64,000 nt of DNA from IMG/VR virus record IMGVR_UViG_3300033145_003233, positions 434,001 to 498,000 of that record. One strand, written 5' to 3'. Below, piece after piece: positions 3,319 to 48,100 of this stretch. The translations under genes were made by a program, and so were the position numbers. The notes beneath the pieces were generated by a model that was given only the letters and a program-made list of their open reading frames with translations, ran no database searches and had not been told where the DNA came from. Every line of letters starts with the position of its first letter. The stretch's first letter is position 1.

Positions 3319-3366
3319 TAAGCTAACTCCCTATAAATACAACTCACTATATTATATATCGGCTTT

Positions 3367-8262: not shown

Positions 8263-8264
8263 TT

Positions 8265-14372: not shown

Positions 14373-14384
14373 TAATTTCTTTTC

Positions 14385-16322: not shown

Positions 16323-16331
16323 TAAATATCC

Positions 16332-22208: not shown

Positions 22209-22209
22209 G

Positions 22210-28125: not shown

Positions 28126-28141
28126 ATTTCCCCTGCCTTAT

Positions 28142-30247: not shown

Positions 30248-30248
30248 T

Positions 30249-31226: not shown

Positions 31227-31227
31227 T

Positions 31228-32232: not shown

Positions 32233-32233
32233 T

Positions 32234-33778
32234 TTAATTTCCCGTATCTATCATAGTAAAAGTATAATTGCTACTAGCATCTTTGTCCATAACCATAATT
32301 TCAGATGAATTACTAAAGAATATATATAGAACATTTCCATCAGTTTTTATCTTATAAATATTTCTAGCATTCAAATATGAGCTATGTTCTGTAGAAATAG
32401 TAGATCCACCAAAGCTCAATAATATACCATTTTCTAAACCTAGAAATAACTTATTATCAAATACTTCCATAGAGTTAATAACAGAATCCGAAAAATATAA
32501 TGAATTTAAAGTAGCATTATCGGCATCTAAATATTGACTATCATTATCCGCTACCGATTCTACTTCCGAGACATTAAATCTCTGCAAGATACCTTTATTA
32601 TCACTATCTTTTATCGCTATATATAACATACTATTATAAAATTTTAATGAAGTAGCATCTCCATCTAAAGTAGATAATAATGTTAAATTTTTATACAATT
32701 GAGCATTAGCAGTAGAACTCAAAGCAAACGCCATATATAAATCACCATCAATATTATCATACAACAAAGATGTTACTTCTCTATCTCCTAAATTTTTATA
32801 AGTTCTAAAATAATTAGCATTAGGATCATTATAAATCATATTCCCGGCATAATCTTTAAATCTTACTTTAATCAATTTAACTCCATCATCTCCAGAGACA
32901 TCCCATGTAGACCACGAAGTTACATCCGCAAAGTCACCAGACTCTGGCTGCTCCTCTACCCCTACATCTTCTTGTTCAATTCTAAATTCCTTAACCGCGC
33001 TTGTTTTATCATAAAAATTCAAATTAACGATAAGATTTCTTTCCTTAATATATTCAGTATTGTCTGATATTTTAATAGTTCCTTTAGGTGGGGTAGTATC
33101 AATAAGAAAATAATTTATATTATTAATAATCAAATCACTTATAAAAACAGGAGATGACACATTTATATCATCTACCAACTCTATCTTTAGAGAATAGTCA
33201 GAAGCCGTAGAAAAACCGCTAACATCTAAATCAAATGGATCTGAACCAACCATAATATTGCTACGAAGCAAGGTCCAGTCTATGCCTAGACTTTCTGAAC
33301 TATAGTAAATTTGATAAAAAGATCTCTGAGAACATCTGCCCAGAATAGAACTATGATCAAATACAATAGGGATATACGAATAATAAGTAGCTCTCTGTTG
33401 AGGCTCAACCATAGATGGAGATGGCAATTCTTTATTAATAATGGCAAAATCAGCAGCAGAAAAAGATACTTTACTCCTCAATCCCTCATGATTAACCGCC
33501 CTGATACCAACTCGACACTGATTACCCTTAAGATTTTTATGTATGTTATAGGAATAAGAGGAATTTCCATATGGAATAGTAGCTATATGTAATAACTCCG
33601 GTTTTTTGTCGGCATCGTAAAAATCTGTAATAAATATTTCGTACCATAACATTTCCGAAGAAGGGACATTAGACGGTTCTATCCATTGAATACTTGCAAC
33701 TCCATCTGCCAATATCTCTCCACCATTAGGATATATAATCGTAGGAGCATCAGTTAATATGTTAAAAAGAACAGCCAT
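32234..33778 (-). CDS. Ig-like domain structural protein with C-terminal propeller blades
   Basis: PTIIYPNGGE...IQW; DTTPPKGTIKI...GDDGVKLIKVRFKDYAGN. AAGGTGA SD. Confidence 0.6.
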   Translation of the reverse strand: MAVLFNILTDAPTIIYPNGGEILADGVASIQWIEPSNVPSSEMLWYEIFITDFYDADKKPELLHIATIPYGNSSYSYNIHKNLKGNQCRVGIRAVNHEGLRSKVSFSAADFAIINKELPSPSMVEPQQRATYYSYIPIVFDHSSILGRCSQRSFYQIYYSSESLGIDWTLLRSNIMVGSDPFDLDVSGFSTASDYSLKIELVDDINVSSPVFISDLIINNINYFLIDTTPPKGTIKISDNTEYIKERNLIVNLNFYDKTSAVKEFRIEQEDVGVEEQPESGDFADVTSWSTWDVSGDDGVKLIKVRFKDYAGNMIYNDPNANYFRTYKNLGDREVTSLLYDNIDGDLYMAFALSSTANAQLYKNLTLLSTLDGDATSLKFYNSMLYIAIKDSDNKGILQRFNVSEVESVADNDSQYLDADNATLNSLYFSDSVINSMEVFDNKLFLGLENGILLSFGGSTISTEHSSYLNARNIYKIKTDGNVLYIFFSNSSEIMVMDKDASSNYTFTMIDTGN

Positions 33779-33788
33779 TCATATCACC

Positions 33789-36488
33789 TTATAAATTTTT
33801 AAAATATAATGGATTCCCAAATTTAAAATTATTATCATCCTGATCATAATATTGTTTAAATCCATCTATATTTAATACCTTAGATATTCTAGAAGTTTTA
33901 TATTTTTCATAAATCTCCTCAGGAGTCAAATCCTTGTTAGTAGCTATCTCACTATCACTAACCATCAAATTATAAAGATCAGAAGAATCGGGAAGACAAC
34001 CTTCCTGCCTAAGAGAATCTGGAAAAATAAGATCCACAAAAGCAGTTCCATCTTTATTAAATACTCCATCTTCTTCCGAGATAGTAAAAGAACCTGTAAA
34101 TGTTTTATGGTCTCCACTATTAATAAGAGTTTCTCCCCATTTATCATTGATACCCTGTTGCACAACATTAAATTTAATTGGATTAGTATCGCTATATGGA
34201 ATATGAGGAGTAACACTTTCATTATAATAAATAGGTTCGCTAAATATAACTTCAAACTCTATTGTAGATATAATAGTATTATCACTATCTCTTTTCAAAG
34301 ATAACACATATTGCCCATTATACATAGGAAATTCATATCTTTCAGAACCTATGCTATAATAAAATCTAAACACATGCTGAACAATATCAAAATTAACAAA
34401 AATTTCTAAACAGAAAGTATTAGTAATACCATACATCGTTAATACTTGACAACATATTCTTCTTATACCATTAACCTTATCTATCTTCCAAGGAACAATA
34501 AATCTAGAATTATCTATCCTATATGCATCATATAATATATCTTCATCCGTGATGTCATCTGTAACATCAGTAGGAGTATTGGGATTATAATATAAATTAT
34601 TATCAATATTAATCCACCCTCCCCAATTCTGATCATTAATATTCCTTAATCTAATAGCATAAGCCCCCTGAATGCCATCTATATCTAATCTTATCGACTG
34701 TTTAACTACAACAGGAACCACTTTATCATCATTAATTACTAATGATTTATCTACATCTTCTTCATATACTCTTACCTTGATTGTGTCATAAGAACTATCC
34801 AGATAAGTAATTAAGCCAGGATTGCATAAGCTCTCAAACGAAGCTGTTGGGCTATCAGTTGTTACCACTCCCTCCAAACTAATCGGTAAAGGACAAGCAT
34901 TGTACAATATTCGGTCTATTACGCTCCCCGCAATATAAAAGTTATTAGACTGATCGGTAATTACAATAGGATTATTAACAGAACTATTGTCCTTAATATA
35001 TAATTTGTCATACATCCCTTGGCCTGAAGAATATAACAAATCCTGAGAAGAGTCCCACATCGATCCATATATGCCTCCAACGCTGTTTCTTCTGCTCTGC
35101 CATATTATTTGAAAAATACCGAATATATTAGAAGATACATCCGAGAAAACAGATTGATCAGAACTATCAGTAACTTTTAAATCAGCCTTACCCTGACCAC
35201 TACTCAACCAATTATTAGCATCTTTATTATAACTCCATGAATATAAATCAACATCCTCACAATCTAAAATAAGAGAAATCGTCTCTAAAAAATTAAGATT
35301 TTGTTCTACAACATCATAAATTTCTACATCTATATAATATTGATTACCACAAATCAAAGGTGTCTCAAATATATCACTATTATTTATACGATGTGTCTTT
35401 TGAATTTCCGTAAATTGATGAGGTAATATTTCTGGATCATAAACAATATTCATTGTTGTTCCAGTATCAATCGTAACTCCGCTAGGAGGTATCTGTACAA
35501 AACTGCCATTATCATAAAACCATCTCTTATTATCAAGTAACGATGATGCCGAATATATTAAATCATTTTTAGAAGAATCAGAATAAAAATTAGCTCTAAA
35601 ATGAAAAAGAGTGCTAGACGAAGAATTACTACAACCAAACGAAACAATATTATCTTGATATGTCTCAGACGGACAATAGAACAAGGAGACATTGGCCGTT
35701 TCATAAGCTGGGATAGGTTCAAAAACGACAGTTACAGCCCTGTCTATAGACATATTAACAGTTAACAATACTCCGTGTTCTGAAATCCCGCTATCTAAAT
35801 CATATTGCCATTCTTTAAAATAATATCCATTAGCAGGAATAGGATTCAAATTCAAAATAAAATAATCACAATATTCTCCAGATGGTGGAGACACCGATCC
35901 CTTACCAACTATATTAACAACAAGATCATTAGTTGTACAAGGTCCAGTTGGTGTAAAATTAACTACAATTCTTCTTGATGAATATCCTATTAATGTAAAA
36001 TCTACATAAGCAGCAGTCGTCCCTAAATCAACTCCATCTAATTCCCAACTATCTATCTCCCATTCATCCGATGGTGTAGCAGAAACCCTAACCTGAGTAG
36101 CAACTAATAAAATACTGCCGCCTGCACAATTCACTGTGTAACCAGTAGGACTTGACAATTCTATACAACCATTACCGCTACCCACTTCTAATATTAAGTT
36201 AACATCCGGATGTTTAAATGAAACTGTCACATCTACATCTTGAGAAGGCATTAATATGGTTACAACATCTTGACCAGCAGTAGGTGTTGTGAAAACACCA
36301 TCAACAGTGCTATCCCAATCATCTACTTCCCATCCACTATCAGGCTGTGCTTTTAATTCAATAAAAACACCTTCTGTATAATTTGTAGCACATGATTCGC
36401 CTGGGGCCTTCCATGCATAACTACACCCAGGTTGCTGAATAGATCCCAGCCCCTCATCCACACTAGTTATTAAACAATATTCTGCCAT
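33789..36488 (-). CDS. Structural protein with three InlB-B/Flg_new-type repeats, an HFRxxFYxD domain and propeller blades
   Basis: LKAQPDSGWEVDDW...DVTVSF, VSATPSDEWEIDSW and PIPANGYYFKEW...AVTVVF; FHFRANFYSD. AAGGA SD. Confidence 0.65.
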   Translation of the reverse strand: MAEYCLITSVDEGLGSIQQPGCSYAWKAPGESCATNYTEGVFIELKAQPDSGWEVDDWDSTVDGVFTTPTAGQDVVTILMPSQDVDVTVSFKHPDVNLILEVGSGNGCIELSSPTGYTVNCAGGSILLVATQVRVSATPSDEWEIDSWELDGVDLGTTAAYVDFTLIGYSSRRIVVNFTPTGPCTTNDLVVNIVGKGSVSPPSGEYCDYFILNLNPIPANGYYFKEWQYDLDSGISEHGVLLTVNMSIDRAVTVVFEPIPAYETANVSLFYCPSETYQDNIVSFGCSNSSSSTLFHFRANFYSDSSKNDLIYSASSLLDNKRWFYDNGSFVQIPPSGVTIDTGTTMNIVYDPEILPHQFTEIQKTHRINNSDIFETPLICGNQYYIDVEIYDVVEQNLNFLETISLILDCEDVDLYSWSYNKDANNWLSSGQGKADLKVTDSSDQSVFSDVSSNIFGIFQIIWQSRRNSVGGIYGSMWDSSQDLLYSSGQGMYDKLYIKDNSSVNNPIVITDQSNNFYIAGSVIDRILYNACPLPISLEGVVTTDSPTASFESLCNPGLITYLDSSYDTIKVRVYEEDVDKSLVINDDKVVPVVVKQSIRLDIDGIQGAYAIRLRNINDQNWGGWINIDNNLYYNPNTPTDVTDDITDEDILYDAYRIDNSRFIVPWKIDKVNGIRRICCQVLTMYGITNTFCLEIFVNFDIVQHVFRFYYSIGSERYEFPMYNGQYVLSLKRDSDNTIISTIEFEVIFSEPIYYNESVTPHIPYSDTNPIKFNVVQQGINDKWGETLINSGDHKTFTGSFTISEEDGVFNKDGTAFVDLIFPDSLRQEGCLPDSSDLYNLMVSDSEIATNKDLTPEEIYEKYKTSRISKVLNIDGFKQYYDQDDNNFKFGNPLYFKNL

Positions 36489-36498: not shown

Positions 36499-39400
36499 TT
36501 AAGTAACCGAATATAATAATTTAGCATAAAGAACCATATCAAAAATCTCATCATCTTTATGCGGCCTATAAGAAATAGACACAGTGTCCCCATTATTTAA
36601 AACCACCCCTAGAAGATTATCATCTGCATCATATGATAAACTCATAGAATCACCGTTAAGAAACCACCTATTTTCTGCTCCCTCAATTGATATAGTCTTA
36701 TACAAATTAGTAAGAGAGCTATCATGATAAAATTCTATTGAAAAGTTATAAGCACCACTCAAATCTACTTCAAATTCAAACGACACAAGACATTCAACAA
36801 TATAATCTTTAAATGCATCCAGCATCTTTCTTTCGCATTTATCCTCATCGCATGAGTAGCCACTTAAAGAACGAGCAGCATAAATATTATAATTTCCATC
36901 TCGATCATCATGCCATGTTATCATTCTAGAACCATTCCTATTTACCGAAACAGATGGTCTCAAACTATTACTCTCAGTGTTAGTTATCTTAGTGTCATAT
37001 CTAAACGGAGAAAGCTTATCAACAGAATTAGTATAAAATATATTCCAATATCTGTCCCTATTAGATTGCCAAGATAGATGAAGATCATTACATGTCCCCC
37101 CACTTACATCAACCGATTGATTAATACCCTCTATAGTAATAGGCACTTGCAGAAAACCATTATTAGAATATATTTTCTTAAAGTAAACAATGAAAGACCA
37201 GCTGCTATCATCTCCTCCAGATTCAACAGTCACGCTAATAATATCATATGATATTATATCTACATCAAAATTAAACCCCTGAGAAACAACCGGAGTAGAT
37301 ATAAACCCAGTATCATATAGAACAGTGCTACCAGCAGCTATAATTATTCTATCAGCTATGCTCGCCGCATCAAATTCTACACTAATTTTATCTATATCTT
37401 CGACATCATAAACAGAGTAAAAATTATTTCCAGCTAAGTCATACGATGACGCATAAGAAACAATATCCTCTTCTGCTCTAAAATTCAAACTTAACAGATT
37501 ATTAGATGGATTATAACGAGTTGTATTATCGGGGAGATTAATAGATGACTCATCGATTACTCTTAATTCCGTACTGTCCTGAACAGAAACAGGCAAATTG
37601 ATAATAGCACTATTATGAGCGAAAGTAGGAGAAGTAATCCGAACATCATTAATCTCCAAATTCATAGAGACGTTTTCAAAAACACCAAATTTGCTCGGAG
37701 ACATCTTATCGGCAACATAATAACCGCCATACGGAACCCCAAATCCCAAATCAAAATAATTATAATCATCAGACAATGTAGAAATAAAAGATTGAGAAAA
37801 CTTAGGAGCATCATCTATCAACAAAGTAATCGTGCCTATAAATTTATTATTATAAGTTCTGTCATAAGTATCTAAAACATTAGCAACCTCGTCTGAACCT
37901 ATACTTTTATAATTAAGAATAATAGTATAAGATGATAACTCATTAATTTCTAATATCTCTGGAAATTCTCTTACTATGATATAATCAGATCTCTCATCAC
38001 TTATATCTTCTGTTTTTATAAGGACCACTAATTTTGCCCTACCAGTAAAAATAACTTCTGTTTCTTCTGGAGTATAAGGATCTCCGTAACCACGGTCATA
38101 ATAAGCAGAAGGTGTTTCTATATTAGTAGCTCTAAAATATGATTTCTCAAAAAGCAATCCTAAAGAAAAATCTTTAAGATTATTATCACTCTTTAAAATT
38201 TCTATCCTAAATCTCTCTGTAGACGGATCTGGAGTATCTTTATATGACCCGATTATAGGAATAATCCTATCAAAGATATTATCGCTTTTACCTATTACAA
38301 ATTTATTATTATTTTTCACATATACCGGCTGATTATCTACATTCTCATCAATAGAAACTGTAAAACCATCCTTCCATGAATCAAATAATTTATCTATTTC
38401 TTTCTCTTCAATAATTATTCCATTATAGTCATCATCAGAGACTATAGAATTTGATTGATTAACAGTTGCCGCTAGTTTAAAAGACATCTGATAATTAAAT
38501 TGAGAATATGGAAAAACACCGAGAACACTAGGGTTATCAACAGAAGTTACTATCTCAAGCGGAAGAAAGGCCATCGCCTCTTCATCCACAGGATTAACCG
38601 TAATTAAAAGATCATTTAAATCTCCCGAAGAAGATCTTTCTGTAACGCTACCTATTGTATCTTCCTCAATCGCCCAGGCAACGGGAACTAAATCACTCGT
38701 CTCATATTCAGGTATAGGATTAGAACCACTCCCAACTACCCTTTCCATGGACGGGATATCGATAGAACTAAATGATTTAGTATCAGTAGATGAAAATTCT
38801 GCATATTTATCCACATAAGAAGAAACAGAAGATGAGACCAAAGATGGAGAAGAAGGGCCTATAACTCCATAATATATTTGACATATATCTCCCCTATTAC
38901 TTTCCCAAACAATATGCAAGTTATTAATAGAATCTGTATATGCCCGTGGATTTTTATTATTCCCGGTATCTGTTAATTGTTCCCATCCATAATTTTCACT
39001 ATCAAATAAAGATGTTCTCCCAGCAGAAAAAGAATAGAAAAATAATTGACTCTTAGTTTCTGCAACAGCTTCAGCTATCAGATAAACATATGTTTCTTCT
39101 TCTAATCCCACATATTTACTATTAGAAGCAACGCTAATATTTATAGTTTGAAGGTAATTGCCGCTACCGTCCCTGATATAAGGAATAGTTATACCATCCA
39201 AATACAAAGATGGATATATCGAAGAGCGATAAAAAACAGCATTAACGCAAAATAACCAATTGCTTATTTTAACATTAGTATTACCAACTTCTCCGGTAAG
39301 AGTCCTGACCCCAGTATATTCATCTGTCGTTCTTTCTACAATCTTAATACGTTGAAATCCTATCATCGCATTAAACAAAACAACATAAATATCTGAAACC

Positions 39401-40494
39401 GACGGACTATCTATAATTTGTAAAGCATTCCATATATCATCAGACACATGAATTTGAAAATCCTCATATGGCTCTTTGGGAGCTATTACAACATCTTTAT
39501 TAGCTACAATGTAATTATCCAAAACCGTTTTTTGAGTAGCAACAAACACCTTATTTATATTAAACCTAGGATCTCCAGCATCCTCATAATTTTTATCTGG
39601 AGAAGTATAAGCATGTAACGCCATACCATTATTTAATAATGTTACAGAATTATGGAATATTTTACAAATCTTATCTGCATCCCCACCCAAACTAACAGAT
39701 GCTGTACTACCTTCAGCACAACGCATCGGCAAACCAACAGATGGAACCGATATTCCAATATCTATCTCTTCTGGAGCAACTGGGGCCTCAATACAATCCC
39801 CAGGTATACTCCATGCACCAGGGACCACATATGCTGGATCGGCTGGATTACACCTAGGGTCAATCGCCGCATGCATAGCTAGAGTTTGAGGTAAAACATT
39901 AAGATACAAATTAGTAAATTTTTTATTAGTATAATTATCTTCTTCGGAATATAAGTAAACAGGCATTTGCCTTACTGCACTTAGCTCATTACTGCCTACG
40001 ACATCTCTACCTTTAAAATTAATTGACCCTGTACCATTTTTATTAATAATAATTCTAAATAATTTGTCATTTATAGAAATAGTACTCTTACTATTTGGCT
40101 TACCCACGATATGAATAGAACATAATCCATCCATCCCAATAAAAGATGGAGTTATAGAAATTTTCTCACTAAATTCACTCGCCTCATCCTTTATGCTAAA
40201 AATGGAAGGACAAATTTGAGCAGTTTTGTAAGAACCATCTGATTGCTTTTCTTCTATATGGGCAAAAATAGAAATAGCAGCTTGAGACGAATGTTCTGGA
40301 ATATTAAGATTCATTACCCCCATACAGGATTTGTTATCCATACGCTGAAATGATCCAATATCAACCTTAACCCCATGCGTAGCATTTTCCATATTAATGC
40401 GAAATTGTTTTGCCCCAATTTCAGAAATCTCAAATTTCAAAGATTTAGCATCTTCTAATATTCCAGATGGAGGATATAATATAAGATTAGCCAT
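36499..40494 (-). CDS. Large structural protein with dispersed propeller blades and a C-terminal HFR-like domain
   Basis: LHIVWESNRG, LHLSWQSNRD and MITWHDDRDGNYNIY blades; FDAASIADRII...YDTGFIS module; YNFSIEFYHD. The start overlaps the glycosyltransferase stop by 8 nt. Confidence 0.55.
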   Translation of the reverse strand: MANLILYPPSGILEDAKSLKFEISEIGAKQFRINMENATHGVKVDIGSFQRMDNKSCMGVMNLNIPEHSSQAAISIFAHIEEKQSDGSYKTAQICPSIFSIKDEASEFSEKISITPSFIGMDGLCSIHIVGKPNSKSTISINDKLFRIIINKNGTGSINFKGRDVVGSNELSAVRQMPVYLYSEEDNYTNKKFTNLYLNVLPQTLAMHAAIDPRCNPADPAYVVPGAWSIPGDCIEAPVAPEEIDIGISVPSVGLPMRCAEGSTASVSLGGDADKICKIFHNSVTLLNNGMALHAYTSPDKNYEDAGDPRFNINKVFVATQKTVLDNYIVANKDVVIAPKEPYEDFQIHVSDDIWNALQIIDSPSVSDIYVVLFNAMIGFQRIKIVERTTDEYTGVRTLTGEVGNTNVKISNWLFCVNAVFYRSSIYPSLYLDGITIPYIRDGSGNYLQTINISVASNSKYVGLEEETYVYLIAEAVAETKSQLFFYSFSAGRTSLFDSENYGWEQLTDTGNNKNPRAYTDSINNLHIVWESNRGDICQIYYGVIGPSSPSLVSSSVSSYVDKYAEFSSTDTKSFSSIDIPSMERVVGSGSNPIPEYETSDLVPVAWAIEEDTIGSVTERSSSGDLNDLLITVNPVDEEAMAFLPLEIVTSVDNPSVLGVFPYSQFNYQMSFKLAATVNQSNSIVSDDDYNGIIIEEKEIDKLFDSWKDGFTVSIDENVDNQPVYVKNNNKFVIGKSDNIFDRIIPIIGSYKDTPDPSTERFRIEILKSDNNLKDFSLGLLFEKSYFRATNIETPSAYYDRGYGDPYTPEETEVIFTGRAKLVVLIKTEDISDERSDYIIVREFPEILEINELSSYTIILNYKSIGSDEVANVLDTYDRTYNNKFIGTITLLIDDAPKFSQSFISTLSDDYNYFDLGFGVPYGGYYVADKMSPSKFGVFENVSMNLEINDVRITSPTFAHNSAIINLPVSVQDSTELRVIDESSINLPDNTTRYNPSNNLLSLNFRAEEDIVSYASSYDLAGNNFYSVYDVEDIDKISVEFDAASIADRIIIAAGSTVLYDTGFISTPVVSQGFNFDVDIISYDIISVTVESGGDDSSWSFIVYFKKIYSNNGFLQVPITIEGINQSVDVSGGTCNDLHLSWQSNRDRYWNIFYTNSVDKLSPFRYDTKITNTESNSLRPSVSVNRNGSRMITWHDDRDGNYNIYAARSLSGYSCDEDKCERKMLDAFKDYIVECLVSFEFEVDLSGAYNFSIEFYHDSSLTNLYKTISIEGAENRWFLNGDSMSLSYDADDNLLGVVLNNGDTVSISYRPHKDDEIFDMVLYAKLLYSVT

Positions 40495-41587
40495 ATAACT
40501 CTTTCACCATCCCCATAAACATATTGCTAATTTTTGAATAATTAAATCTTTCCCTCACATAAGAATATGCTCTATCAGTTTTAATTTTTATATAATCTTT
40601 GTGATTAATTACATATCTCATAGCTTTTTGTATTTTGTTTACCTCTATAAATGCCCATTTTTTATTTCTAAATTGTGGAATATTATCCATGTTATTATGA
40701 AGAATAAATCCGCTTGGCTCAATTAGAACGGCTGTATCTTCGTTAGCATAATCTTTACACCCAGCATAATTTGTTATAATAACAGGAATCCCCAATGCCA
40801 TACATTGAAGACCAGGATACCCGAATCCTTCTCCCATAGTAGGAGAGATCAAACAATCTACAGATTTTATAAAATTTGGCAAAACCTTTTCATTAAACAC
40901 TTTATTTTCAAAAATTATAGGGGCAAATCCTTTGTTTATTCCCAATTGACCCCTAAGCTTATTAAAATATTGCTCTGCCTTTTTAGGCTTGTCAGTTTTT
41001 ACTAATAATTGGACTCCATCAGTATCTTTAAATTCCCTACCCCATGCTTCCAACAATTGTTTATATCCCTTTCTTTCTTTCCAAATACCTATGAATAAAA
41101 AAGTATATTTATCAAAATTATCTAAAGGAACGATATCTCTATGATAAGTTTCAATATCTATACAATGTGGGATATAATAAAGCGGCTTTTTAATCGTCAT
41201 ATGTGAGAAAATCTTATAATTAAATTGAGAAGGAACTATGATAGCATCGTTTTCATTAAGGATATCCACCCAATGATCGGGAGGCTGAAATGTTTCAAAA
41301 GTAGCAAAACCTATACTTCTATGATGTTTCTTTTTTACCCTTTTTTGGATATTTGGGATACAATGATATATTAAAATTCTTTCAGGATTATCCTTCTTTT
41401 TTGCCATCCTCATAAAAAATTCATATTTTTCATCACTAATAGCTGGTTTAGATGGCCTACCCCCAAAAGTAGTAATTTTGATATCAAAATAACCAGTTTT
41501 TTCTAAAGAAAAAATATAATTTTGAGCTGCTTGGGAATAACCTGACTGATTTAGGAAACATATCCAATTAAGCTTGATTTTTTCCAT
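40487..41587 (-). CDS. Glycosyltransferase, GT-B fold, family 4-like
   Basis: SGYSQAA N-terminal loop, TFETFQPP.HW...DAIIVPSQFN, YYIPHCID, FLFIGIWKERKGY, SPTMGEGFGYPGLQCMALGIPVI. Confidence 0.9.
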   Translation of the reverse strand: MEKIKLNWICFLNQSGYSQAAQNYIFSLEKTGYFDIKITTFGGRPSKPAISDEKYEFFMRMAKKKDNPERILIYHCIPNIQKRVKKKHHRSIGFATFETFQPPDHWVDILNENDAIIVPSQFNYKIFSHMTIKKPLYYIPHCIDIETYHRDIVPLDNFDKYTFLFIGIWKERKGYKQLLEAWGREFKDTDGVQLLVKTDKPKKAEQYFNKLRGQLGINKGFAPIIFENKVFNEKVLPNFIKSVDCLISPTMGEGFGYPGLQCMALGIPVIITNYAGCKDYANEDTAVLIEPSGFILHNNMDNIPQFRNKKWAFIEVNKIQKAMRYVINHKDYIKIKTDRAYSYVRERFNYSKISNMFMGMVKELYG

Positions 41588-41613
41588 TTTCTTTCTTCTA
41601 ATAAATACATCTC

Positions 41614-44600
41614 TTATACGCTTACTATTAAACTATCGTCATTTAGCACCTTTGTATCATTAATTATATTAAATGTTCCGCTTCCATAATTCCAAGTTAT
41701 ATTCCCATAGCTATCTAATCTTATAAGGCGACCAGAAGCATCTGCGAAACTTGATTCTGAAATAATCATATCTCCATTACTATATCCGTCCACATCAGAA
41801 GGATACAGCCCATCAGGAGAAACATATAATACTTGTGTTTTATTATTAATTTTATCCAAAATAACCACTTTACCAATATAATTCTTTAAAGCATCAATAG
41901 CAGATGCCCTAAATAAAACTCCAGCAGGAGCACTAGCTGCTCCTCCATACTCACCAATCAGATCAGAACCACTAATACCAGTTAAAGTAGAAGTAGATTG
42001 TTCTATCCCAGAGATTATAAATCTACCATCTTCATATTCATAGATACCACCTAATGAATAATCTGAAAATTTAATATCACTAGACGAAATCTTGCTGTCT
42101 GTGTCCGCTGAATCAGTTGGATCAATTTCTATAACATCAGGAACATTAGCAGTTTCGCTATTGCTATCAACTACATAATGAACAGAAGAATTAGCAATAA
42201 TCCAATTATCCTCACTAGTCTCATTAATAAAAATAGGATGACTTATATTATCTATATAAGTGAAATCTCCAATAAAGCATGTTATCCCTCTTAAAGCACT
42301 AAAAATACTATTTCCTATAGTAGTCATGCCCGCGCTTATCGTAATATCTTCTGTAAATGCTCCGGCATCAAAATTAACTGACAAATCACTTGTAATCCCC
42401 ACAAGTCTCACTGAAGTATCATCATCTAGTTGAATTTCTAATACTTTATTTCCCGCCTTATTGCTATTAATAACCGTGTCATCCACTGTAAGAGAAAGTT
42501 TAGAAGAACCGATATAAAAAGCTATTTTAGTAATATCAGATACTACTGCTGATTTTGTAAAAACTAATGCCAGAACTTTTGTAACATTATTATATACAGC
42601 AGAGAGAGGATAAAAAGTACTATCGGTAGAATAGGTAGAACCAAAACCCCTTACTAAATTACCGATACTATCTACTTCCAATACCCTATTATTATTTGTG
42701 TCAGCCACTAAAAAATTATTATTAAACTTTCTTATAACTGAAGAAACTCTAGAAAAACCACGACTAGAATAAGCAGACCACTCCCTTGCTTGATTGGGAG
42801 AAACTGGCATTAAATTACCACTAAATCCATAAACACCTATATTATTATCATTCATCTCACTGACAGAGCCACCTTTGGCGAAATATCTTCCCCCAACATT
42901 AATAGGTGTTGAAATAGTTAAATGAGATTTTCCAGCCTCAACAGAATCCTCAACGCTAATATTGCTAGGAGTTCCCCTATCCCATTCTACTTCTGTATCA
43001 ATAACAAATCCTGTGAAGTCAGCACTAACCAGTATTCTTAGTTCTAAACTATTCAATGTAGGAGATAAAGCTCTACCATCATCACTAGTCATAACTATTT
43101 CTATTTCTGTATTAGTTCCAGTAGAAGCTATAACCCCACCAGAACTAAGAGGAAATGAATATGCCGACCTTGATAACAAGTCAGAAGAACTAGCCGTTTT
43201 AACCCTTACTGATAAAGAAGTTCCATCAGGCACATCAGCATTATAAAAAATAGAATGAAAAACAACACTTGCCTCTGTGCTATATCTAAATCTAATTGTT
43301 CCGCTTTCAGCAAGTAAATTAGTTTTTCTAACTTCTATATCGTCAATATCAAAAATAAAATCATCATCAGTATAAATCGCAATCTGGGTAACTTCAGTTA
43401 ACCCTAAATTAGAAATATCAAAAGACTTTTCTTCAAATGATGACATGCTTTCATCTTGTGCTAATAAAGTCCAAGAAGTGCTAGGTTTTTTTGTTCCCTC
43501 TATATCTCCAACTTCGATACTACCAAACTGACCATCACTATTAACATTAGAACCATTCACAACATACATATAAACAGGTCTATGTATCTCTTCGCTTGTC
43601 TTTACTTTAATAACTAATTCATCATATGTTCCATCCCAATTTTTTGCTTCTGTAAGATTTTTTCTATAAAAATAATTAAAAGTAGCTCCCCCGCCTAATC
43701 TACCTATCCTATTCCCCTCTTCTACCGTTACTGCTGCCTGAGTACTGTCATCTATGATAAGAGTCTCAGGAGTAAATCCTATAATATTATCGCTAAAATC
43801 TGCTATAGACTCTGTTATTTCAGAAGATCTATCTAAACTAACTGAATCATTCTCTATCAAAACATTATTAGTGAGATTAGCAGTATTAAATGAATATGTA
43901 TTATTCCAGTATACTGATGTAAAGATACCAGATTGAGCAGGCACTCCGCTTATACACTGATCGGGCAAACTAATATTAGCAGTACTAGCAGCAAAATCTA
44001 TAAAACTGTCAGGAGATACCCCAGGAATTAAAGCCAGCTCATTAATAAAATATTGATCTACATTAGCATAATTATATTTCCAGAATATGATCGACCTTAA
44101 TAAATTAACACTAGTAATCTCCCCTAGTAACTCTTTGTTATTTTGAGACATAGTTCTAACAAAAGAATCTAAAGCTGCATGTGTTAATAACCCATTATTC
44201 TCTAAATTATTATGATCTATTAATGGAATTCTATCTATATCAAATTGCCCAGTTACCACCTTAGAAGCATCTATCCCCTCTATCCTGGCCCCAGGTAATT
44301 GATTCTTAACTTCTTCCTCTAAATCTATCTTAGAAGGAGTTCCCCTATGTTGATGAGAATTAATCGCATCATCAATAATTTGTTCAAACCCTATCAAATC
44401 TCTTACAGTATTATCTATATATAGAATATCGCTAGCTCCTGTTGAAACTCTCGCTAGCCTAATGGAGTCGTTGCCAGATAATGTTATTGTAGAATAAATA
44501 AAATTAATAATTCTATCTAAGGAAGTTGTTCCTGATAAAGTAGCATAAATATCAATAATACTATTAGGTGGCAACCCATAAACAGAACCAGGCAAGGCTG

Positions 44601-44850
44601 TTTCAGATGCCATATAATTAATAACGCCGATTCCCTCAGCAATAGATATGGAAATTCCAAGACCCTCTTGAAAACCAGCATCACGAACTGTCCATCCCTC
44701 TATTACTCCATTCCCAAATACACTATAAAGACCATATAACTGTTTATCTATTACAACAAACCTATCTATCTCTTTTTGAACATTTATCCTAGTATCTAGT
44801 CTGTCCCCAAAATCAAAAAAAGCTAAATTATAATATCTAGTTTGTCCCAT
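41614..44850 (-). CDS. Tail fibre-like protein: anchor-like N-terminal domain, HxH and fibre repeat, jelly-roll domains, NHL-like propeller
   Basis: YYNLAFFDFG...RFVVIDKQL...GNGVIEGW; HQH...KIDL; IDASKVVTGQFDIDRIP (phage fibre ASKITSGxLxxARIP-like); FLVADTNNNRVLEV. GGGAG SD. Confidence 0.68.
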   Translation of the reverse strand: MGQTRYYNLAFFDFGDRLDTRINVQKEIDRFVVIDKQLYGLYSVFGNGVIEGWTVRDAGFQEGLGISISIAEGIGVINYMASETALPGSVYGLPPNSIIDIYATLSGTTSLDRIINFIYSTITLSGNDSIRLARVSTGASDILYIDNTVRDLIGFEQIIDDAINSHQHRGTPSKIDLEEEVKNQLPGARIEGIDASKVVTGQFDIDRIPLIDHNNLENNGLLTHAALDSFVRTMSQNNKELLGEITSVNLLRSIIFWKYNYANVDQYFINELALIPGVSPDSFIDFAASTANISLPDQCISGVPAQSGIFTSVYWNNTYSFNTANLTNNVLIENDSVSLDRSSEITESIADFSDNIIGFTPETLIIDDSTQAAVTVEEGNRIGRLGGGATFNYFYRKNLTEAKNWDGTYDELVIKVKTSEEIHRPVYMYVVNGSNVNSDGQFGSIEVGDIEGTKKPSTSWTLLAQDESMSSFEEKSFDISNLGLTEVTQIAIYTDDDFIFDIDDIEVRKTNLLAESGTIRFRYSTEASVVFHSIFYNADVPDGTSLSVRVKTASSSDLLSRSAYSFPLSSGGVIASTGTNTEIEIVMTSDDGRALSPTLNSLELRILVSADFTGFVIDTEVEWDRGTPSNISVEDSVEAGKSHLTISTPINVGGRYFAKGGSVSEMNDNNIGVYGFSGNLMPVSPNQAREWSAYSSRGFSRVSSVIRKFNNNFLVADTNNNRVLEVDSIGNLVRGFGSTYSTDSTFYPLSAVYNNVTKVLALVFTKSAVVSDITKIAFYIGSSKLSLTVDDTVINSNKAGNKVLEIQLDDDTSVRLVGITSDLSVNFDAGAFTEDITISAGMTTIGNSIFSALRGITCFIGDFTYIDNISHPIFINETSEDNWIIANSSVHYVVDSNSETANVPDVIEIDPTDSADTDSKISSSDIKFSDYSLGGIYEYEDGRFIISGIEQSTSTLTGISGSDLIGEYGGAASAPAGVLFRASAIDALKNYIGKVVILDKINNKTQVLYVSPDGLYPSDVDGYSNGDMIISESSFADASGRLIRLDSYGNITWNYGSGTFNIINDTKVLNDDSLIVSV

Positions 44851-44861: not shown

Positions 44862-45095
44862 TTATGCACCAACAACAGGAGAAGTCGTAGTAAATCCTAC
44901 TATGGCGAAATTACCCTCTCCTGTCAAATTTAGCATTTGTCTTGCTCCGAAATCTAGCATCCCGCCTCTTCTATATTTTGTATCTCTATGAGAGGGGGTT
45001 CCCAAACGATTTATTTCCTGATTAATATAATCTCTATTAACATTAAACATTTTTCTAACTGTATTATCTAAATCGTCATTATATGTTTGTCTCAT
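44862..45095 (-). CDS. Small hypothetical virion protein (77 aa)
   Basis: Strong GAGGAG SD; fills the gap between the hub-like and fibre-like genes. Confidence 0.6.
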   Translation of the reverse strand: MRQTYNDDLDNTVRKMFNVNRDYINQEINRLGTPSHRDTKYRRGGMLDFGARQMLNLTGEGNFAIVGFTTTSPVVGA

Positions 45096-45116: not shown

Positions 45117-48100
45117 TTAAAGAACAGTAGTAGCTGCCTGAATAGGCTGATATCTCATACATTCTACATTCATCCACCATTCATTTTTTTCAGCATTAAT
45201 GCTATGAGTTACTTTTACCACCCTACAATCTTCATTATTAATTCTTATAATATCATTGGCCCTTAAAGGCAGACCATACGTTTCAAATTTTATATTTACT
45301 TTAGGTCTAAATGCAACCGAATATTTTCTTACTGTAGCGTTAACTGCCTCAATAGAACCAAACATCCCTTCTTGTTGGTACATCGTTTTTAAATAACCTA
45401 GAAAACCTTCTGTCTCTGGATTTTCCATGGCGCTCCAATTTAATTCATCCCTAATTAACAAATGCATATCCGGAGTATTGCTCATTATCTTAATATGATT
45501 ATATACACCAGAAACTTCATAGTTCCTCTCTACTTTATTAAAAACTAATTGTCCTGGATATTTTTCAGGATTAATAGTAAAATAGTACAAAGGAGCTAAA
45601 GGAACAAGACCTAGATAATCTTGTTCTATAATATCTTGGAAATCTTCATAATGAGCTATGCCAAATTGATCAAAAAAGAATACCTTAGCTGCTCTCTTAG
45701 CTATTTTAGATATCGCGTCCATATAGACATCGCCATCATCGAACTTAAAACTTGGCTGTTCTAATCTGTTATATCCGCTAGGAAGAGCATAAGGTTCCAT
45801 TTTAAATAATCTACCATCGAAGTGATGATAAAACACACCTGGACTCAAAGCATTGGCAGATGCGGATAAATTTCTTATCAAAGAACCTGGATCATATTTA
45901 TTTTCATCTCGGAAACCAGCTATTTGCATAATTTCATAAATAGCATTAATGTCCTTAACACCGTCAAACCACGGAGAGTTAAAAAACCTCGTTCCTTTCA
46001 ATACTGCTGTATAATCTTCTATTTTACAACTCATTATATTCTTACCATATTCATAGTCTATTTTTCCACCATGACACAGCCCTGTAAATAATTTATAAAA
46101 CCCAGTGACTCTAGAATATGCACAATTTTGATACCCCACCCATATCTCTACATAAAAAGTCTTATTTTGCAATGCTAATAAAAAATCGGTAACATTATTT
46201 TCTACCGGCATTTCTCTATTAAGATAAAAATGCAAAGTACCCGTATGTTCTATTTCTGAAAAACCACTTGATGACCAAGTATCTCCATAAGTTAAAACAT
46301 GTTCAGTAGCATCTACAAAATAAGGACTTTGAGCAACAAATGGATTAGGAGTTACCCCCTCAGCAGAAGATGTGTTGTCGTCCCATCTAGGAAGAGAACT
46401 GTGATCAGCTATAAGTCTCATAGATGTCAAAACAGGAGTTTTACAATCAGGTAAAAACCATTCGTCATCTGACAAAGTATCCAAAGTATTTTGATCTGTT
46501 CTCTCACTAACAACAGACGGTCTTTCTGCCGCTCCCACCTTAAATATATGATCTCCGGTCATCATGCCTAATATAACATCAAAAGCCTGATGCCTAGTCT
46601 TATCATCATTTCTATATCTGTACTTTCTAACTACAATATTAGAAGTTTTATAAATAGTATCATTACCCCCAACATCTGGAAATTCTTTAAGAGTCTCATC
46701 ATAAAAGAAACCCCCATAACGATAATTAGAATTTATCATGTTATTATTAGATTCATGATATTCTTTATAAAACTGAGAGTCCTGTACAAATAAAGGCTGA
46801 TTTAACAAAGGTTCTCCAACAGGAGCAACATGAGACCCTAAATCTTGCAAATAAATATCTGCTGATGAGAATAATATGTGATGATTACCCTGATACGGTA
46901 AAAAAAATGGCTGGCTGCTAAATGCCCCCTGCGACTCAGAGGAAGATATCGCCTCTGGCCTACCTTCTCTAAATGCCATTTCCATAGACTCATCTGCCAT
47001 CAGAGGACGAGGAGGATATACAAAAGAGATATATCTTTCTTGATACTGCAAAGGCCCAAATACGAAACCTGCCCTTAAATTCCCCCCCCACAAATGCATA
47101 GGGCCTCTAGGAACAAATAAGGTTCTCAATTTCTCTTTCAAAATTGGCTGTCTTGTATTAGGGTCCCAATCATACTCCCAATCCAATCTTTTAACTACCC
47201 ATGGAGGAACATCTATACCAGGACCACTAAATTGTATTACTAACGATCCTAGATGATTTCTAACTGTTATATCAAAATAATCTGCATTTATTAACTTACT
47301 TCCAACTGTTCCCTCAAAAGTAGAAAATTTCTTAGAAACAAATCCATCTTTTCCAGGCACTACATTAACAAATATAGGATTAGCTCTTTCAGTTATAATA
47401 ATAAAATAATGATCAGTTAAACCTGCTCCCAATTCTATAATATAATATCCTTGAGAACTAAAATCAAAACTTTTAAAATCTGGCGTTTGATTACCCACTG
47501 TAGGAGGCCTAACAGCATAATTAGTAGGAAGCTTAAAATCGCTATTATTAACCATTAAAACATCTTGATTAGCTGTTATATCTAAATAACTATATTTATT
47601 ATTATTAAAAGATGGAATATATTTTTCACTAGATTTAATTGTTGTTTTTTTTGCCTGTTTATAAAATCTTATAAAGAAATCCTCTCCCCTATAAAGAAAT
47701 GTCCTTTTCCCTAATCTCCAGTGATTGCCCTCACCTCTATCTCCGTGTACTTTTTTCTGAAGAGGCATCTGAACATGATAAGGCAATATAACAGGCACTT
47801 TCCCTGCTATTAGTCTCCCCTCATCATCTAAACTATTGTCGTATTCTTCATAAGTACTCTTGATATAATCATATGACAAATCAGAATATGTAACCTCGGA
47901 TTCAGAAACAGTTTGATCTAAATATGTCCATTCAGCAGATGTGCATTCATCAATACCTTCTAAGGTTGAATTATCATCGAAAACACTAGGCATTATAAAC
48001 CAGGACTGCTCTGCTTTATATCTTGTTTTATCAGCATTAGGAACAGGAGCAGTAACTCCTCCTCCATTCTGAGTTATCTCTTTAAAATAAGTTTCAAAAT

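What the first reader, a model, noticed from the sequence alone, without database searches (positions are those of the whole stretch)
40487..41587. Glycosyltransferase embedded in the virion operon, with an EX7Q variant motif
Seen: a GT4-like gene sits between two structural genes, and its stop overlaps the next start (ATGGCTAA, 8 nt), so it is co-expressed with tail proteins. The usual EX7E nucleotide-sugar motif reads EGFGYPGLQ, with the second Glu replaced by Gln. Established: virion glycosylation by phage-encoded glycosyltransferases is known in some actinobacteriophages and in giant viruses. Inference: it glycosylates the Ser/Thr/Asn-rich tail proteins or is itself a virion component. The Gln may alter donor specificity or activity.
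Basis: partly seen in the sequence, partly recalled or inferred. Interest (0 to 1): 0.62.

Follow-up and report, generated by a model that had tools for sequence, protein, structure and literature searches.

The report
Conserved glycosyltransferase inside huge-phage tail module
A 548-kb phage carries a sugar-adding enzyme, with one sugar-donor-binding glutamate always replaced by glutamine, locked between its tail-tip genes in every relative examined, which suggests (but does not prove) that these phages sugar-coat their own tail fibres.

Summary
Window 40487-41587 (-) encodes a 366-aa GT-B, GT4-like glycosyltransferase. It passes the Pfam thresholds and its model has pLDDT 91.7. Its stop overlaps the start of the next gene by 8 nt (ATGGCTAA), and its EX7E motif reads E253-GFGYPGL-Q261.

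The context is a tail module. The window lies in a 547,943-bp phage record. Upstream, on the same strand, are a tail-tube gene and a 5139-aa tape-measure-like ORF. From that ORF onward, 17 genes run with gaps of 26 nt or less.

New findings:
- The gene is a fixed part of this module in all 25 related contigs that could be read (40-66% identity).
- It is at least as conserved as the best-conserved neighbouring protein.
- Gln261 is invariant in about 140 homologues, with synonymous CAA/CAG variation.
- The same EX7Q occurs in distantly related Streptomyces phage enzymes, so it marks a phage subfamily and is not a one-off change.

Glycosylation of tail-tip or fibre proteins is the best explanation (about 0.5) but is untested. 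No donor or acceptor could be assigned. The enzyme shows no detectable relation to Che8 gp108, the one known mycobacteriophage virion glycosyltransferase compared. I rate it a new variant of a known kind, of moderate interest.

The parts
40487..41587 (-). 366-aa GT-B (GT4-like) glycosyltransferase, protein P0001
   Evidence: Model pLDDT 91.7. GT4 and viral GT fold matches.
40805..40831 (-). Codons for E253-GFGYPGL-Q261, the EX7E position with Gln in place of the second Glu
   Evidence: Gln is invariant in about 140 homologues.
40487..40494 (-). ATGGCTAA: the GT stop codon overlaps the start codon of the 1331-aa gene by 8 nt
   Evidence: Of 18 IMG/VR loci, 12 keep an ATG or GTG start 8 or 11 nt into the GT's 3' end, five have a longer apparent overlap (26-44 nt to the first possible start) and one has a 6-nt gap. 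L004-L007 and L016 also overlap by 8 or 11 nt.
36499..40494 (-). 1331-aa S/T/N-rich protein whose start overlaps the GT stop; probable tail-tip or fibre protein with propeller-like repeats
   Evidence: No family hit. Weak BNR/sialidase-like Atlas lead. 28-45% identical in relatives; fused with the next protein in L006 and L017 and apparently in the 11 IMG/VR loci with a >2,300-aa downstream ORF.
41614..44850 (-). 1078-aa conserved protein upstream of the GT: N-terminal beta-sandwich, low-confidence conserved HxH segment, jelly-roll region and C-terminal 6-bladed NHL-type propeller; probable baseplate or fibre protein
   Evidence: Model pLDDT 77.9. phi812 baseplate, HFTV1 tail and viral tail/fibre matches at low TM-score. 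Propeller Z 17-18.
44862..45095 (-). 77-aa conserved small protein of the module
45117..48476 (-). 1119-aa module protein (a weak feature-based lead to phage tail protein clusters)
48487..52449 (-). 1320-aa protein immediately after the tape-measure-like ORF
52468..64000 (-). C-terminal 3843 codons of a 5139-aa ORF (genome 486468-501887), tape-measure-like
   Evidence: The N-terminal part hits phrog_794, tail length tape measure, at 1.5e-8. ORF extent. A tail tube gene lies upstream.
33789..36488 (-). 899-aa protein with an InlB B-repeat (Flg_new_2) domain; fused to the 1331-aa homologue in some relatives
5143..33778 (-). Ten further large S/T/N-rich proteins of the same block (514, 334, 328, 701, 1971, 1958, 645, 2035 and 1039 aa and others) carrying LamG, Ig, fn3, beta-propeller, FG-GAP, Kelch and VWA domains; probable fibres or adhesins

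Best explanation
The gene encodes a catalytically competent GT-B (GT4-like, so probably retaining) nucleotide-sugar glycosyltransferase. It is made late, from the same transcript as the tail-tip genes of a huge siphovirus-like phage, and is translationally coupled to the large protein downstream. It most likely transfers a sugar onto one or more of the S/T/N-rich tail-tip or fibre proteins encoded around it. The 1078-aa and 1331/899-aa proteins are the first candidates. The result would be glycosylated tail appendages.

The invariant Gln at the second EX7E position would still hydrogen-bond the ribose hydroxyls of the donor nucleotide, but without the negative charge. It is an ancestral, selected feature of this phage GT subfamily and not a loss of function.

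Shown: fold and family, motif, overlap, operon layout, synteny and conservation. Inferred: activity, late co-expression, protein acceptor and the role of Gln.
For: Family and fold:
-.
- Catalytic-site residues typical of GT4 are kept. E253 is invariant. R172-K173-G174 is nearly invariant and aligns with the R/K-x-K-G of solved GTs. H141, N13 and G16 are invariant.

Tail context:
- Phage_tube_2 gene at 7e-14, above the Pfam cut-off.
- The 5139-aa ORF matches a tape-measure PHROG at 1.5e-8.
- Seventeen co-directional genes follow with gaps of 26 nt or less.
- Terminator-like sites occur at chance level, 8 against 6.4 +/- 2.6; by coordinates all lie inside ORFs.
- Neighbours carry adhesin-type domains and are S/T/N-enriched.
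- The 1078-aa model's best-ranked solved match is a phage baseplate chain and it also matches a haloarchaeal virus tail, both at low TM-score.

Synteny:
- The GT lies between the 1078-aa and 1331/899-aa homologues in L005, L006, L016 and L017 and in 20 of 21 IMG/VR loci. In the 21st it is still inside the module.

Conservation (window against L005/L006/L016/L017):
- GT 64/55/52/44%.
- 1078-aa protein 62/49/44/41%.
- 1331-aa protein 39/30/28/29%.

Gln under selection:
- Invariant residue with CAA/CAG variation.

The phage has its own sugar chemistry:
- Five clustered epimerase/dehydratases, an aldo-keto reductase, transketolase/E1-like genes, a GT2 and two GT4-like genes at 311-341 kb.
- A GT9/methyltransferase/GT4 cluster beside a collagen-like fibre gene.

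Precedent:
- Phage-encoded GTs glycosylate the capsid and tail tube of mycobacteriophages (PMC11600133, PMC12363180). In Corndog they sit just upstream of the capsid protease.

Role of the second Glu:
- It hydrogen-bonds the ribose 2' and 3' hydroxyls, and its importance varies among GT4 enzymes (PMC8760489).
Against: - There is no direct evidence for glycosylation, expression or activity. No RNA run was found.
- Neither flanking protein has a sequence-level structural annotation. The fold matches for the 1078-aa protein are multi-domain with low TM-scores (0.12-0.15), and its clearest domain is a generic propeller.
- No mucin-like acceptor tract stands out.
- The complex prediction for the GT with the N-terminal 620 aa of the 1331-aa protein gave no answer.
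- The GT is unrelated to Che8 gp108, so the precedent is an analogy only.
- No NCBIfam equivalog was found, so donor and acceptor are unknown.
- GT4 enzymes usually act on lipid, sugar or small-molecule acceptors rather than on proteins.
Confidence: 0.5

Rival explanations
1. The enzyme modifies a host cell-envelope glycan or glycolipid (LPS, teichoic acid, capsule or a lipid-linked precursor) late in infection. This would mask receptors, so that progeny are not lost on debris or so that superinfection is blocked. Its place in the tail operon would only serve timing.
For: GT4 enzymes typically use lipid or saccharide acceptors. The weak NCBIfam matches are to LPS, teichuronic acid, EPS and glycolipid GTs. 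Jumbo-phage GT clusters have been proposed to remodel host outer polysaccharides (PMC7824862). The genome has a separate sugar island that could serve such a role.
Against: Host-remodelling GT clusters are described as sporadic and polymorphic. This gene is fixed in one slot of the tail module in all relatives and is more conserved than most of its structural neighbours. The start/stop overlap with a tail-module protein is also conserved.
Confidence: 0.15
2. The protein acts mainly as a non-enzymatic partner. It would be a fibre-assembly chaperone, or a virion component that binds a sugar or nucleotide, occupying the slot where tail-fibre assembly genes often lie. Gln261 would reflect relaxed or altered catalysis.
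For: It lies directly between two large fibre-like proteins and is translationally coupled to the second. The canonical ribose-binding Glu is absent in every member.
Against: All other GT4 active-site residues are invariant or nearly so. Gln can still bind ribose hydroxyls, and in some GT4 enzymes one Glu is dispensable (PMC8760489). The complex prediction gave no support, which is not evidence either way. No GT-structural protein fusions were seen in 25 loci.
Confidence: 0.15
3. The gene is a conflict or auxiliary gene, for example for anti-defence or for glycosylating a small molecule or a host protein. It would have become fixed in the tail operon for historical reasons.
For: There is a weak match to Pfam GT4-conflict (20.9 bits, below the cut-off of 26), which is stronger in some relatives. 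The slot just upstream of the GT attracts mobile genes: HNH endonucleases, an IS605 TnpB and an R2K ATP-grasp gene.
Against: There is no PADLOC match. The GT itself never moves or drops out, while the inserted genes vary. Its conservation is very high for an accessory gene.
Confidence: 0.08
4. The enzyme is a DNA base glycosyltransferase that protects the phage genome from restriction.
For: Phage GT-B enzymes that glucosylate DNA exist. This rests on my own knowledge and on Pyle et al. 2024 as cited in PMC12619734.
Against: No match to DNA-GT families appeared in the Pfam or PHROG scans. The gene is located in the tail module, far from replication and nucleotide genes. The best fold matches are GT4 enzymes and a chlorovirus GT.
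Confidence: 0.02

Closest known systems
Streptomyces phage glycosyltransferases of phrog_2170 (e.g. Faust gp18/gp19, Riptide gp39)
   Same: They share the same PHROG (7e-32 for the query). tblastn gives about 25% identity over about 280 aa (E 6e-13). They have the same EX7Q variant, GEGFGLIPLQ / GEGFGLIPFQ.
   Different: They are shorter (about 330 aa) and lack the N-terminal insertions. They lie next to ribonucleotide reductase and endolysin, a few genes upstream of the portal, and not inside a tail module. I found no functional data for them.
Chlorovirus NY-2A B736L (PDB 3oy2), a virus-encoded GT-B glycosyltransferase
   Same: It is the best structural match (Foldseek E 2.5e-16, TM 0.72) and the second-best PDB profile hit (1.8e-8). 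It is virus-encoded and has a GT-B fold with the GEGFG motif.
   Different: Identity is only 15%. B736L keeps the canonical second Glu (GEGFGLCSAE). It comes from a eukaryotic giant virus. Its entry calls it only a 'putative glycosyltransferase'.
Mycobacteriophage virion glycosylation systems (Che8 gp108-110, Corndog gp36-38; Freeman et al. 2023, as cited in PMC11600133 and PMC12363180)
   Same: Phage-encoded GTs modify virion proteins (capsid and tail tube). In Corndog the genes sit inside the structural gene block, just upstream of the capsid protease.
   Different: There is no detectable homology to Che8 gp108 (hhalign probability 0.7%), and no Mycobacterium phage appeared among 136 tblastn hits. 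The targets there are capsid and tail tube C-termini. Here the gene is in the tail-tip/fibre part of the operon, and glycosylation is unproven.
Cellular GT4 retaining glycosyltransferases (PimA, MshA, BshA, WaaG, PglA, archaeal GlgA)
   Same: GT-B fold, Pfam Glycos_transf_1, a first Glu in GEGFG, an R/K-x-K-G phosphate-binding motif, and TM 0.6-0.72.
   Different: The second Glu of EX7E is replaced by Gln. Identity is 11-16%. No NCBIfam equivalog was found. The family appears restricted to phages: the only hit among 185,579 species genomes is a 13-kb phage-like contig in a MAG.

Membership tests
GT-B glycosyltransferases, Pfam clan members Glycos_transf_1 / Glyco_trans_1_4 (CAZy GT4-like) | Sequence match above the curated Pfam thresholds | tested here: met
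   PF13692 at 58.5 bits (cut-off 27) and PF00534 at 46.5 bits (cut-off 26.4).
GT-B glycosyltransferases, Pfam clan members Glycos_transf_1 / Glyco_trans_1_4 (CAZy GT4-like) | Two Rossmann-like domains with an interdomain cleft (GT-B fold) | tested here: met
   Model pLDDT 91.7 and pTM 0.90. At least 500 PDB matches at E<=0.001, and those listed at the top are almost all GT4 or GT5 GT-B enzymes.
GT-B glycosyltransferases, Pfam clan members Glycos_transf_1 / Glyco_trans_1_4 (CAZy GT4-like) | EX7E motif with both glutamates | tested here: not met
   The first Glu (E253) is present and invariant. The second position is Gln261 in all of about 140 family members. The literature says the importance of either Glu varies among GT4 enzymes (PMC8760489).
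GT-B glycosyltransferases, Pfam clan members Glycos_transf_1 / Glyco_trans_1_4 (CAZy GT4-like) | Basic residues that bind the donor pyrophosphate (R/K-x-K-G at the start of the C-terminal domain) | tested here: met
   W-K-E-R172-K173-G174-Y is nearly invariant. It aligns with GRIRKTKG of 5i45 and the equivalent segment of GlgA. The functional role is inferred from PMC8760489.
GT-B glycosyltransferases, Pfam clan members Glycos_transf_1 / Glyco_trans_1_4 (CAZy GT4-like) | Retaining transfer from an NDP-sugar; formal CAZy family assignment | not testable with these tools
   No enzymology and no CAZy/dbCAN library were available. NCBIfam gives only sub-threshold hits.
PHROG 2170 phage glycosyltransferases | Full-length profile match | tested here: met
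   7.1e-32, residues 15-364 against profile positions 16-372 of 374.
Phage virion-glycosylation systems (mycobacteriophage type) | Homology to the characterised GTs (Che8 gp108-110, Corndog gp36-38) | tested here: not met
   hhalign of A1 against Che8 gp108 gives probability 0.7%. No Mycobacterium phage was among the tblastn hits. gp109, gp110 and the Corndog proteins were not compared individually.
Phage virion-glycosylation systems (mycobacteriophage type) | GT gene(s) encoded by the phage and co-located or co-expressed with virion genes | tested here: met
   The gene lies in the tail module downstream of the tube and tape-measure genes, with gaps of 26 nt or less and a conserved start/stop overlap. 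Co-expression is inferred, not measured.
Phage virion-glycosylation systems (mycobacteriophage type) | Glycans demonstrably attached to virion proteins | not testable with these tools
   This needs virions or co-expression followed by mass spectrometry.
Anti-phage / conflict-system GT4 (Pfam GT4-conflict, PADLOC) | Match above threshold to conflict-system GT models | tested here: not met
   PF20706 at 20.9 bits, below the cut-off of 26. PADLOC gave no hit.

The most novel reading that the evidence does not exclude
A widespread clade of 200-550-kb phages glycosylates its own tail-tip fibres with a dedicated, core 'fibre glycosyltransferase' of a phage-only EX7Q subfamily. The sugars would be made or tailored by the phage's own 30-kb nucleotide-sugar island. 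That would be autonomous virion glycosylation of the kind known from chloroviruses and mimiviruses, but in bacteriophages and aimed at the host-recognition apparatus.
Probability: 0.25. Interest if true: 0.75.

Novelty: new variant of a known kind. Interest (0 to 1): 0.5.

Why it matters
Phage-encoded virion glycosylation has so far been shown only for the capsid and tail tube of some mycobacteriophages, where it blunts antibody recognition.

A glycosyltransferase that is a fixed and unusually conserved part of the tail-tip module across a large clade of huge phages would point to glycans on the receptor-binding apparatus itself. Such glycans could affect adsorption, host range, stability and resistance to proteases or host lectins.

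The finding also defines a phage-restricted GT4-like subfamily in which the ribose-binding Glu is always Gln. That is a clean natural experiment on what this residue does in GT-B enzymes. The gene is also a convenient marker for locating the otherwise unannotatable tail-fibre module in huge-phage contigs.

Tried and rejected
- Single-sequence scan of IMG/VR with P0001 found nothing. The alignment-based scan then found 21 loci.
- Pfam searches of the phage's own genome for tail sheath (PF04984) and terminase (PF03237) found nothing. The tail type was therefore inferred from the tube and tape-measure hits only.
- tblastn of both flanking proteins against 50,697 phage records gave no match.
- PDB sequence searches of the 1331-, 1078- and 899-aa proteins gave nothing useful.
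- PHROG and Pfam scans of most large block proteins gave no structural family.
- Atlas feature searches gave only leads: BNR/sialidase-like at 0.80 for the 1331-aa protein, and phage 'tail protein' clusters at 0.93 with few shared features for the 1119-aa protein.
- Complex prediction of the GT with the first 620 aa of the 1331-aa protein returned 'no answer' (score 0.11). This counts neither for nor against binding.
- hhalign against Che8 gp108 showed no relation.
- A full-text literature search for 'EX7Q' found nothing relevant.
- Freeman et al. 2023 (PMC10527164) is not held, so it is cited only through papers that describe it.
- The look-up of sequencing runs found one small-share DNA run (cold-seep metagenome) and no RNA run. 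Read laying was therefore not used, and there is no expression evidence.
- The large representative-protein search was not run.
- I first considered that the variable gene between the 1078-aa gene and the GT in relatives might be a functional partner, because it is an R2K ATP-grasp in one contig. I rejected this as a general feature: in other contigs the slot holds HNH endonucleases or an IS605 TnpB, and in this window it is empty.
- An alternative genetic code was considered, because some huge phages recode TAG. I rejected it: coding density is 92% under table 11, all three stops are used, and there is no suppressor tRNA.
Full report
1. WHAT IS THERE

The window is positions 434001-498000 of a single 547,943-bp IMG/VR virus record. 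The record has 33.6% G+C and 92% coding density under the standard code. It uses all three stop codons and has 29 tRNAs with no suppressor.

The ORF at 40487-41587 on the minus strand encodes 366 aa.
- It passes the curated Pfam thresholds for Glyco_trans_1_4 (58.5 bits) and Glycos_transf_1 (46.5 bits).
- It matches phrog_2170 'glycosyltransferase' over its whole length at 7e-32.
- An AlphaFold2 model built on 32 homologues has mean pLDDT 91.7 and pTM 0.90, with the two Rossmann-like halves of a GT-B enzyme.
- The best Foldseek match is the chlorovirus NY-2A glycosyltransferase B736L (3oy2, E 2.5e-16, TM 0.72). Classical GT4/GT5 enzymes follow: sucrose-phosphate synthase, MshA, PimA/PimB', BshA, WaaG, PglA and archaeal glycogen synthase.
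- NCBIfam gives only sub-threshold hits to many different GT4 families, so neither donor nor acceptor can be read from homology.

(a) Overlap. Plus-strand 40487-40494 is ttagccat, which is ATGGCTAA on the coding strand. The GT ends TAT-GGC-TAA, and the 1331-aa ORF (36499-40494) starts at the embedded ATG.

(b) Motif. The EX7E position reads E253-GFGYPGL-Q261. Profile alignments to solved structures place Q261 on the second Glu of GEGFGLPALE (5i45), GEGFGLCSAE (3oy2) and FEPFGLVALE (P. abyssi GlgA).

(c) Composition. The neighbours are S/T/N-rich. The genome mean is 17.2%. The 1078-aa protein has 26.3%, the 1331-aa protein 24.0%, and the next ten proteins 22-29%. The tape-measure-like ORF (14.0%) and the two proteins after it (18-19%) are not enriched.

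3. IS IT A VIRION OPERON?

The two flanking proteins have no Pfam, PHROG, NCBIfam, phage-tblastn or PDB sequence match. The label 'structural' therefore had to be tested through context.

Upstream on the same strand:
- A 368-aa protein at genome 503292-504398 matches Pfam Phage_tube_2 (7e-14, above the cut-off) and phrog_290.
- Three small ORFs follow it.
- Next comes a 5139-aa ORF (genome 486468-501887, entering the window at 52468). Its N-terminal part matches the tape-measure phrog_794 at 1.5e-8.
- Further upstream are weak head-tail adaptor and tail assembly protein PHROG hits, LamG 'virion structural protein' hits and a collagen-like tail fibre.

From the 5139-aa ORF onward the gene order, by protein length, is: 5139 - 1320 - 1119 - 77 - 1078 - GT - 1331 - 899 - 514 - 334 - 328 - 701 - 1971 - 1958 - 645 - 2035 - 1039.
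- All are on one strand, with intergenic distances from -8 to +26 nt.
- Terminator-like hairpins occur at chance frequency, and by coordinates all lie inside ORFs.
- The proteins downstream of the GT carry adhesin-type domains: InlB B-repeat, LamG, Ig, fn3, beta-propellers, FG-GAP, Kelch and VWA.

The 1078-aa protein was folded on 42 homologues (pLDDT 77.9).
- It has an N-terminal beta-sandwich.
- It has a strongly conserved segment that is poorly modelled as a monomer (residues 162-280, with invariant H166-x-H168-R-G).
- It has jelly-roll domains and a C-terminal six-bladed NHL-type propeller (Z 17-18).
- Its best-ranked solved match (Foldseek E 1.2e-8) is a chain of the phi812 baseplate, and it also matches the Haloferax tailed virus 1 tail.
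- In BFVD it matches LamG proteins of haloarchaeal tailed viruses and proteins named tail fibre or tail protein. TM-scores are low (0.12-0.15), as expected for multi-domain proteins.
- Its first ~100 residues resemble the N-terminus of the 1958-aa protein. From my own knowledge, a shared N-terminal region is usual for fibres that dock on one baseplate.

Taken together, the position after tube, chaperone-sized ORFs and tape measure is the canonical place for distal-tail, baseplate and fibre genes. I accept 'tail module' as well supported, but by inference and not by direct homology of the two immediate neighbours.

4. RELATIVES: THE KEY NEW RESULT

The word-index search returned 239 relatives, and the best 120 are 54-84% identical. 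Many lie on contigs of 100-394 kb.

Gene neighbourhoods were read for:
- L005 (from a 386-kb contig) and L006 (188 kb);
- a 393-kb contig for which only gene calls were available;
- two distant contigs reached through the 1078-aa protein, L016 and L017 (from 204- and 477-kb contigs);
- 21 IMG/VR loci found with the alignment.

Results:
- In 20 of the 21 IMG/VR loci and in all the others, the order is 1119-like, (77-like), 1078-like, GT, 1331/899-like.
- In the remaining locus (L034) the GT sits between the 1331-like and 899-like genes, so it is still inside the module.
- In L006 and L017 the 1331- and 899-aa homologues are fused into one protein. A single downstream ORF of more than 2,300 aa in 11 IMG/VR loci suggests the same there.
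- Of the 18 IMG/VR loci examined, 12 have an ATG or GTG start 8 or 11 nt before the end of the GT, five have a longer apparent overlap (26-44 nt to the first possible start) and one has a 6-nt gap. L004-L007 and L016 also overlap by 8 or 11 nt.
- The only variable element is the short slot between the 1078-like gene and the GT. It is empty here (26 nt). Elsewhere it holds CapR+HNH homing endonucleases, an IS605 TnpB or an R2K ATP-grasp gene. I read this slot as an insertion hot spot for mobile genes and not as a partner function.

The GT is the most conserved gene of the block. Identities of the window proteins against L005/L006/L016/L017 are:
- GT: 64/55/52/44%.
- 1078-aa protein: 62/49/44/41%.
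- 1119-aa protein: 47/36/32/29%.
- 1331-aa protein: 39/30/28/29%.

A pattern scan of 185,579 prokaryotic species genomes found a single hit. It is a 12,957-bp contig binned into a Patescibacteria MAG that also carries the 1078-aa homologue, so it is a phage contig. The patterns were specific, so distant cellular relatives would not have been seen.

5. THE EX7Q VARIANT

- Gln261 is invariant in 120/120 database homologues. It is also present in all 21 further GTs read from loci, down to 40% identity.
- In 24 DNA sequences the codon is CAA 14 times and CAG 10 times, although Glu is one base away. The residue is therefore under purifying selection as Gln.
- The other GT4 active-site elements are kept: invariant G252-E253-G254, nearly invariant R172-K173-G174, and invariant H141, N13 and G16.
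- According to PMC8760489, the first Glu of EX7E contacts the donor sugar and the second hydrogen-bonds the ribose 2' and 3' hydroxyls. That paper also says either Glu is dispensable in some GT4 enzymes.
- A Gln could keep both hydrogen bonds while removing a charge. Whether this changes donor preference cannot be told from sequence.
- The variant is not unique to this clade. Streptomyces phage Faust gp18 and gp19 and Riptide gp39 have GEGFGLIPLQ or GEGFGLIPFQ. They belong to the same PHROG and are about 25% identical.
- The canonical Glu is kept in a Microcystis phage GT, a rudivirus GT, B736L and the three other GT4-like ORFs of this same genome.
- EX7Q therefore marks a phage GT subfamily. 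I found no paper that mentions it.

6. WHAT IT MOST LIKELY DOES

The evidence fits best an active enzyme made together with the tail-tip proteins and acting on one or more of them (confidence about 0.5). In favour:
- fixed position and conserved translational coupling;
- conservation equal to or above that of the structural core;
- S/T/N-rich neighbours;
- a genome with its own sugar chemistry (section 8);
- the precedent of phage-encoded virion glycosylation in mycobacteriophages, where in Corndog the genes sit just upstream of the capsid protease (PMC11600133, PMC12363180).

Against:
- there is no direct evidence of a glycan, of expression or of activity;
- there is no obvious mucin-like acceptor tract;
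- GT4 enzymes more often use lipid or sugar acceptors;
- the enzyme is unrelated to Che8 gp108, so the precedent is only an analogy.

Rivals:
- late modification of the host envelope (0.15);
- a mainly non-catalytic assembly or virion role (0.15);
- a conflict or auxiliary gene fixed in the operon (0.08; sub-threshold GT4-conflict match, no PADLOC hit);
- DNA glycosylation (0.02).

A complex prediction for the GT with the N-terminal 620 residues of the 1331-aa protein gave no answer. It is listed only as tried.

7. NOVELTY AND SCORE

Phage-encoded virion glycosylation and GT4-like viral enzymes are both known. Three things are new here:
- a distinct, phage-restricted GT-B subfamily with a fixed EX7Q motif;
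- its status as a core gene of the tail-tip module across a broad clade of huge phages (contigs up to about 550 kb from many samples);
- the implied target, the host-recognition apparatus rather than the capsid or tube.

I rate this a new variant of a known kind with interest 0.5. It is a solid and testable comparative-genomic pattern, but its functional claim is untested.

The most novel reading not excluded is autonomous, giant-virus-like glycosylation of phage fibres using phage-made sugars. I give it a probability of about 0.25 and an interest of 0.75 if true.

8. SEEN IN PASSING

These items are also listed in the field for that purpose.
- The 5139-aa tape-measure-like ORF.
- A Volactin-family actin-like gene among the structural genes.
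- A patatin-like phospholipase close to those of Wolbachia phage WO.
- A roughly 30-kb sugar-modification island.
- A cluster of GT9, methyltransferase and GT4 domains beside a collagen-like fibre gene.
- The mobile-element hot spot upstream of the GT.

Noticed in passing
window 52468-64000 (-), continuing to genome 501887 (L008:1-3887): A single 5139-aa ORF whose N-terminal part matches a tape-measure PHROG (1.5e-8). It lies after a Phage_tube_2 gene and three small ORFs. If it is one tape measure, at about 1.5 Å per residue (my own knowledge) it implies a tail of roughly 0.7-0.8 µm. No sheath gene was found with PF04984.
   Followed up: partly
genome 507137-508162 (L008:9137-10162, -): A 341-aa protein with a full-length match to Pfam Volactin (4.4e-59), an actin-family protein. 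It lies between the tail-tube and head-tail-adaptor-like genes.
   Followed up: no
genome 519193-520125 (L009:1193-2125, -): A patatin-like phospholipase that is 47-50% identical to the patatin proteins of Wolbachia phage WO. It is 40% and 28% identical to ORFs in two unannotated 595-635-kb 'uncultured phage' records (LR745206, LR756511).
   Followed up: partly
genome about 311000-341000 (L047, L048): A sugar-chemistry island. It holds five NAD-dependent epimerase/dehydratases, an aldo-keto reductase, two transketolase-like proteins plus an E1 dehydrogenase, an HpcH/HpaI aldolase, a GT2 and two GT4-like genes with canonical EX7E. No nucleotidyltransferase (PF00483) was found anywhere in the genome.
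   Followed up: partly
genome 539314-547921 (L010): A second glycosylation cluster next to a collagen-like tail-fibre gene (416 aa). It comprises a 773-aa protein with a GT9 domain, a 263-aa methyltransferase and a 1126-aa protein combining GT9, methyltransferase and GT4 domains.
   Followed up: partly
L005:9301-10008, L006:9105-10004, L016:13554-14711; the equivalent of window 41588-41613: The short spacer between the 1078-aa gene and the GT is an insertion hot spot in relatives. It holds CapR+HNH endonucleases, an IS605 OrfB/TnpB or an R2K ATP-grasp gene. It is empty (26 nt) in this window.
   Followed up: yes
window 41614-44850 (-), residues 162-280 of the 1078-aa protein: This is among the protein's most conserved stretches (consensus HKHRGTPSKIDL... 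then DH at invariant D212-H213 and H224), yet AlphaFold models it with pLDDT below 50 as a monomer. It may be an intertwined, possibly metal-binding, oligomerisation segment.
   Followed up: no
window 16332-22208 (-) against 41614-44850 (-): The first ~100 residues of the 1958-aa protein resemble the N-terminus of the 1078-aa protein and its homologues (29-33% identity, E 1e-5 to 9e-5). This suggests a shared docking domain.
   Followed up: no
L038 (IMGVR_UViG_3300045125_000158): In this relative the whole module, the GT included, is broken into many short ORFs under table 11. The cause could be assembly errors, decay or another genetic code, and was not resolved.
   Followed up: no
window 2344-4710 (-): Just after the big block, following a 432-nt gap, lie a protein with four DUF4379 treble-clef zinc-finger repeats (1e-66), a DUF4238 protein (6e-29) and then a ResIII/DEAD helicase. 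This marks the end of the tail module.
   Followed up: no
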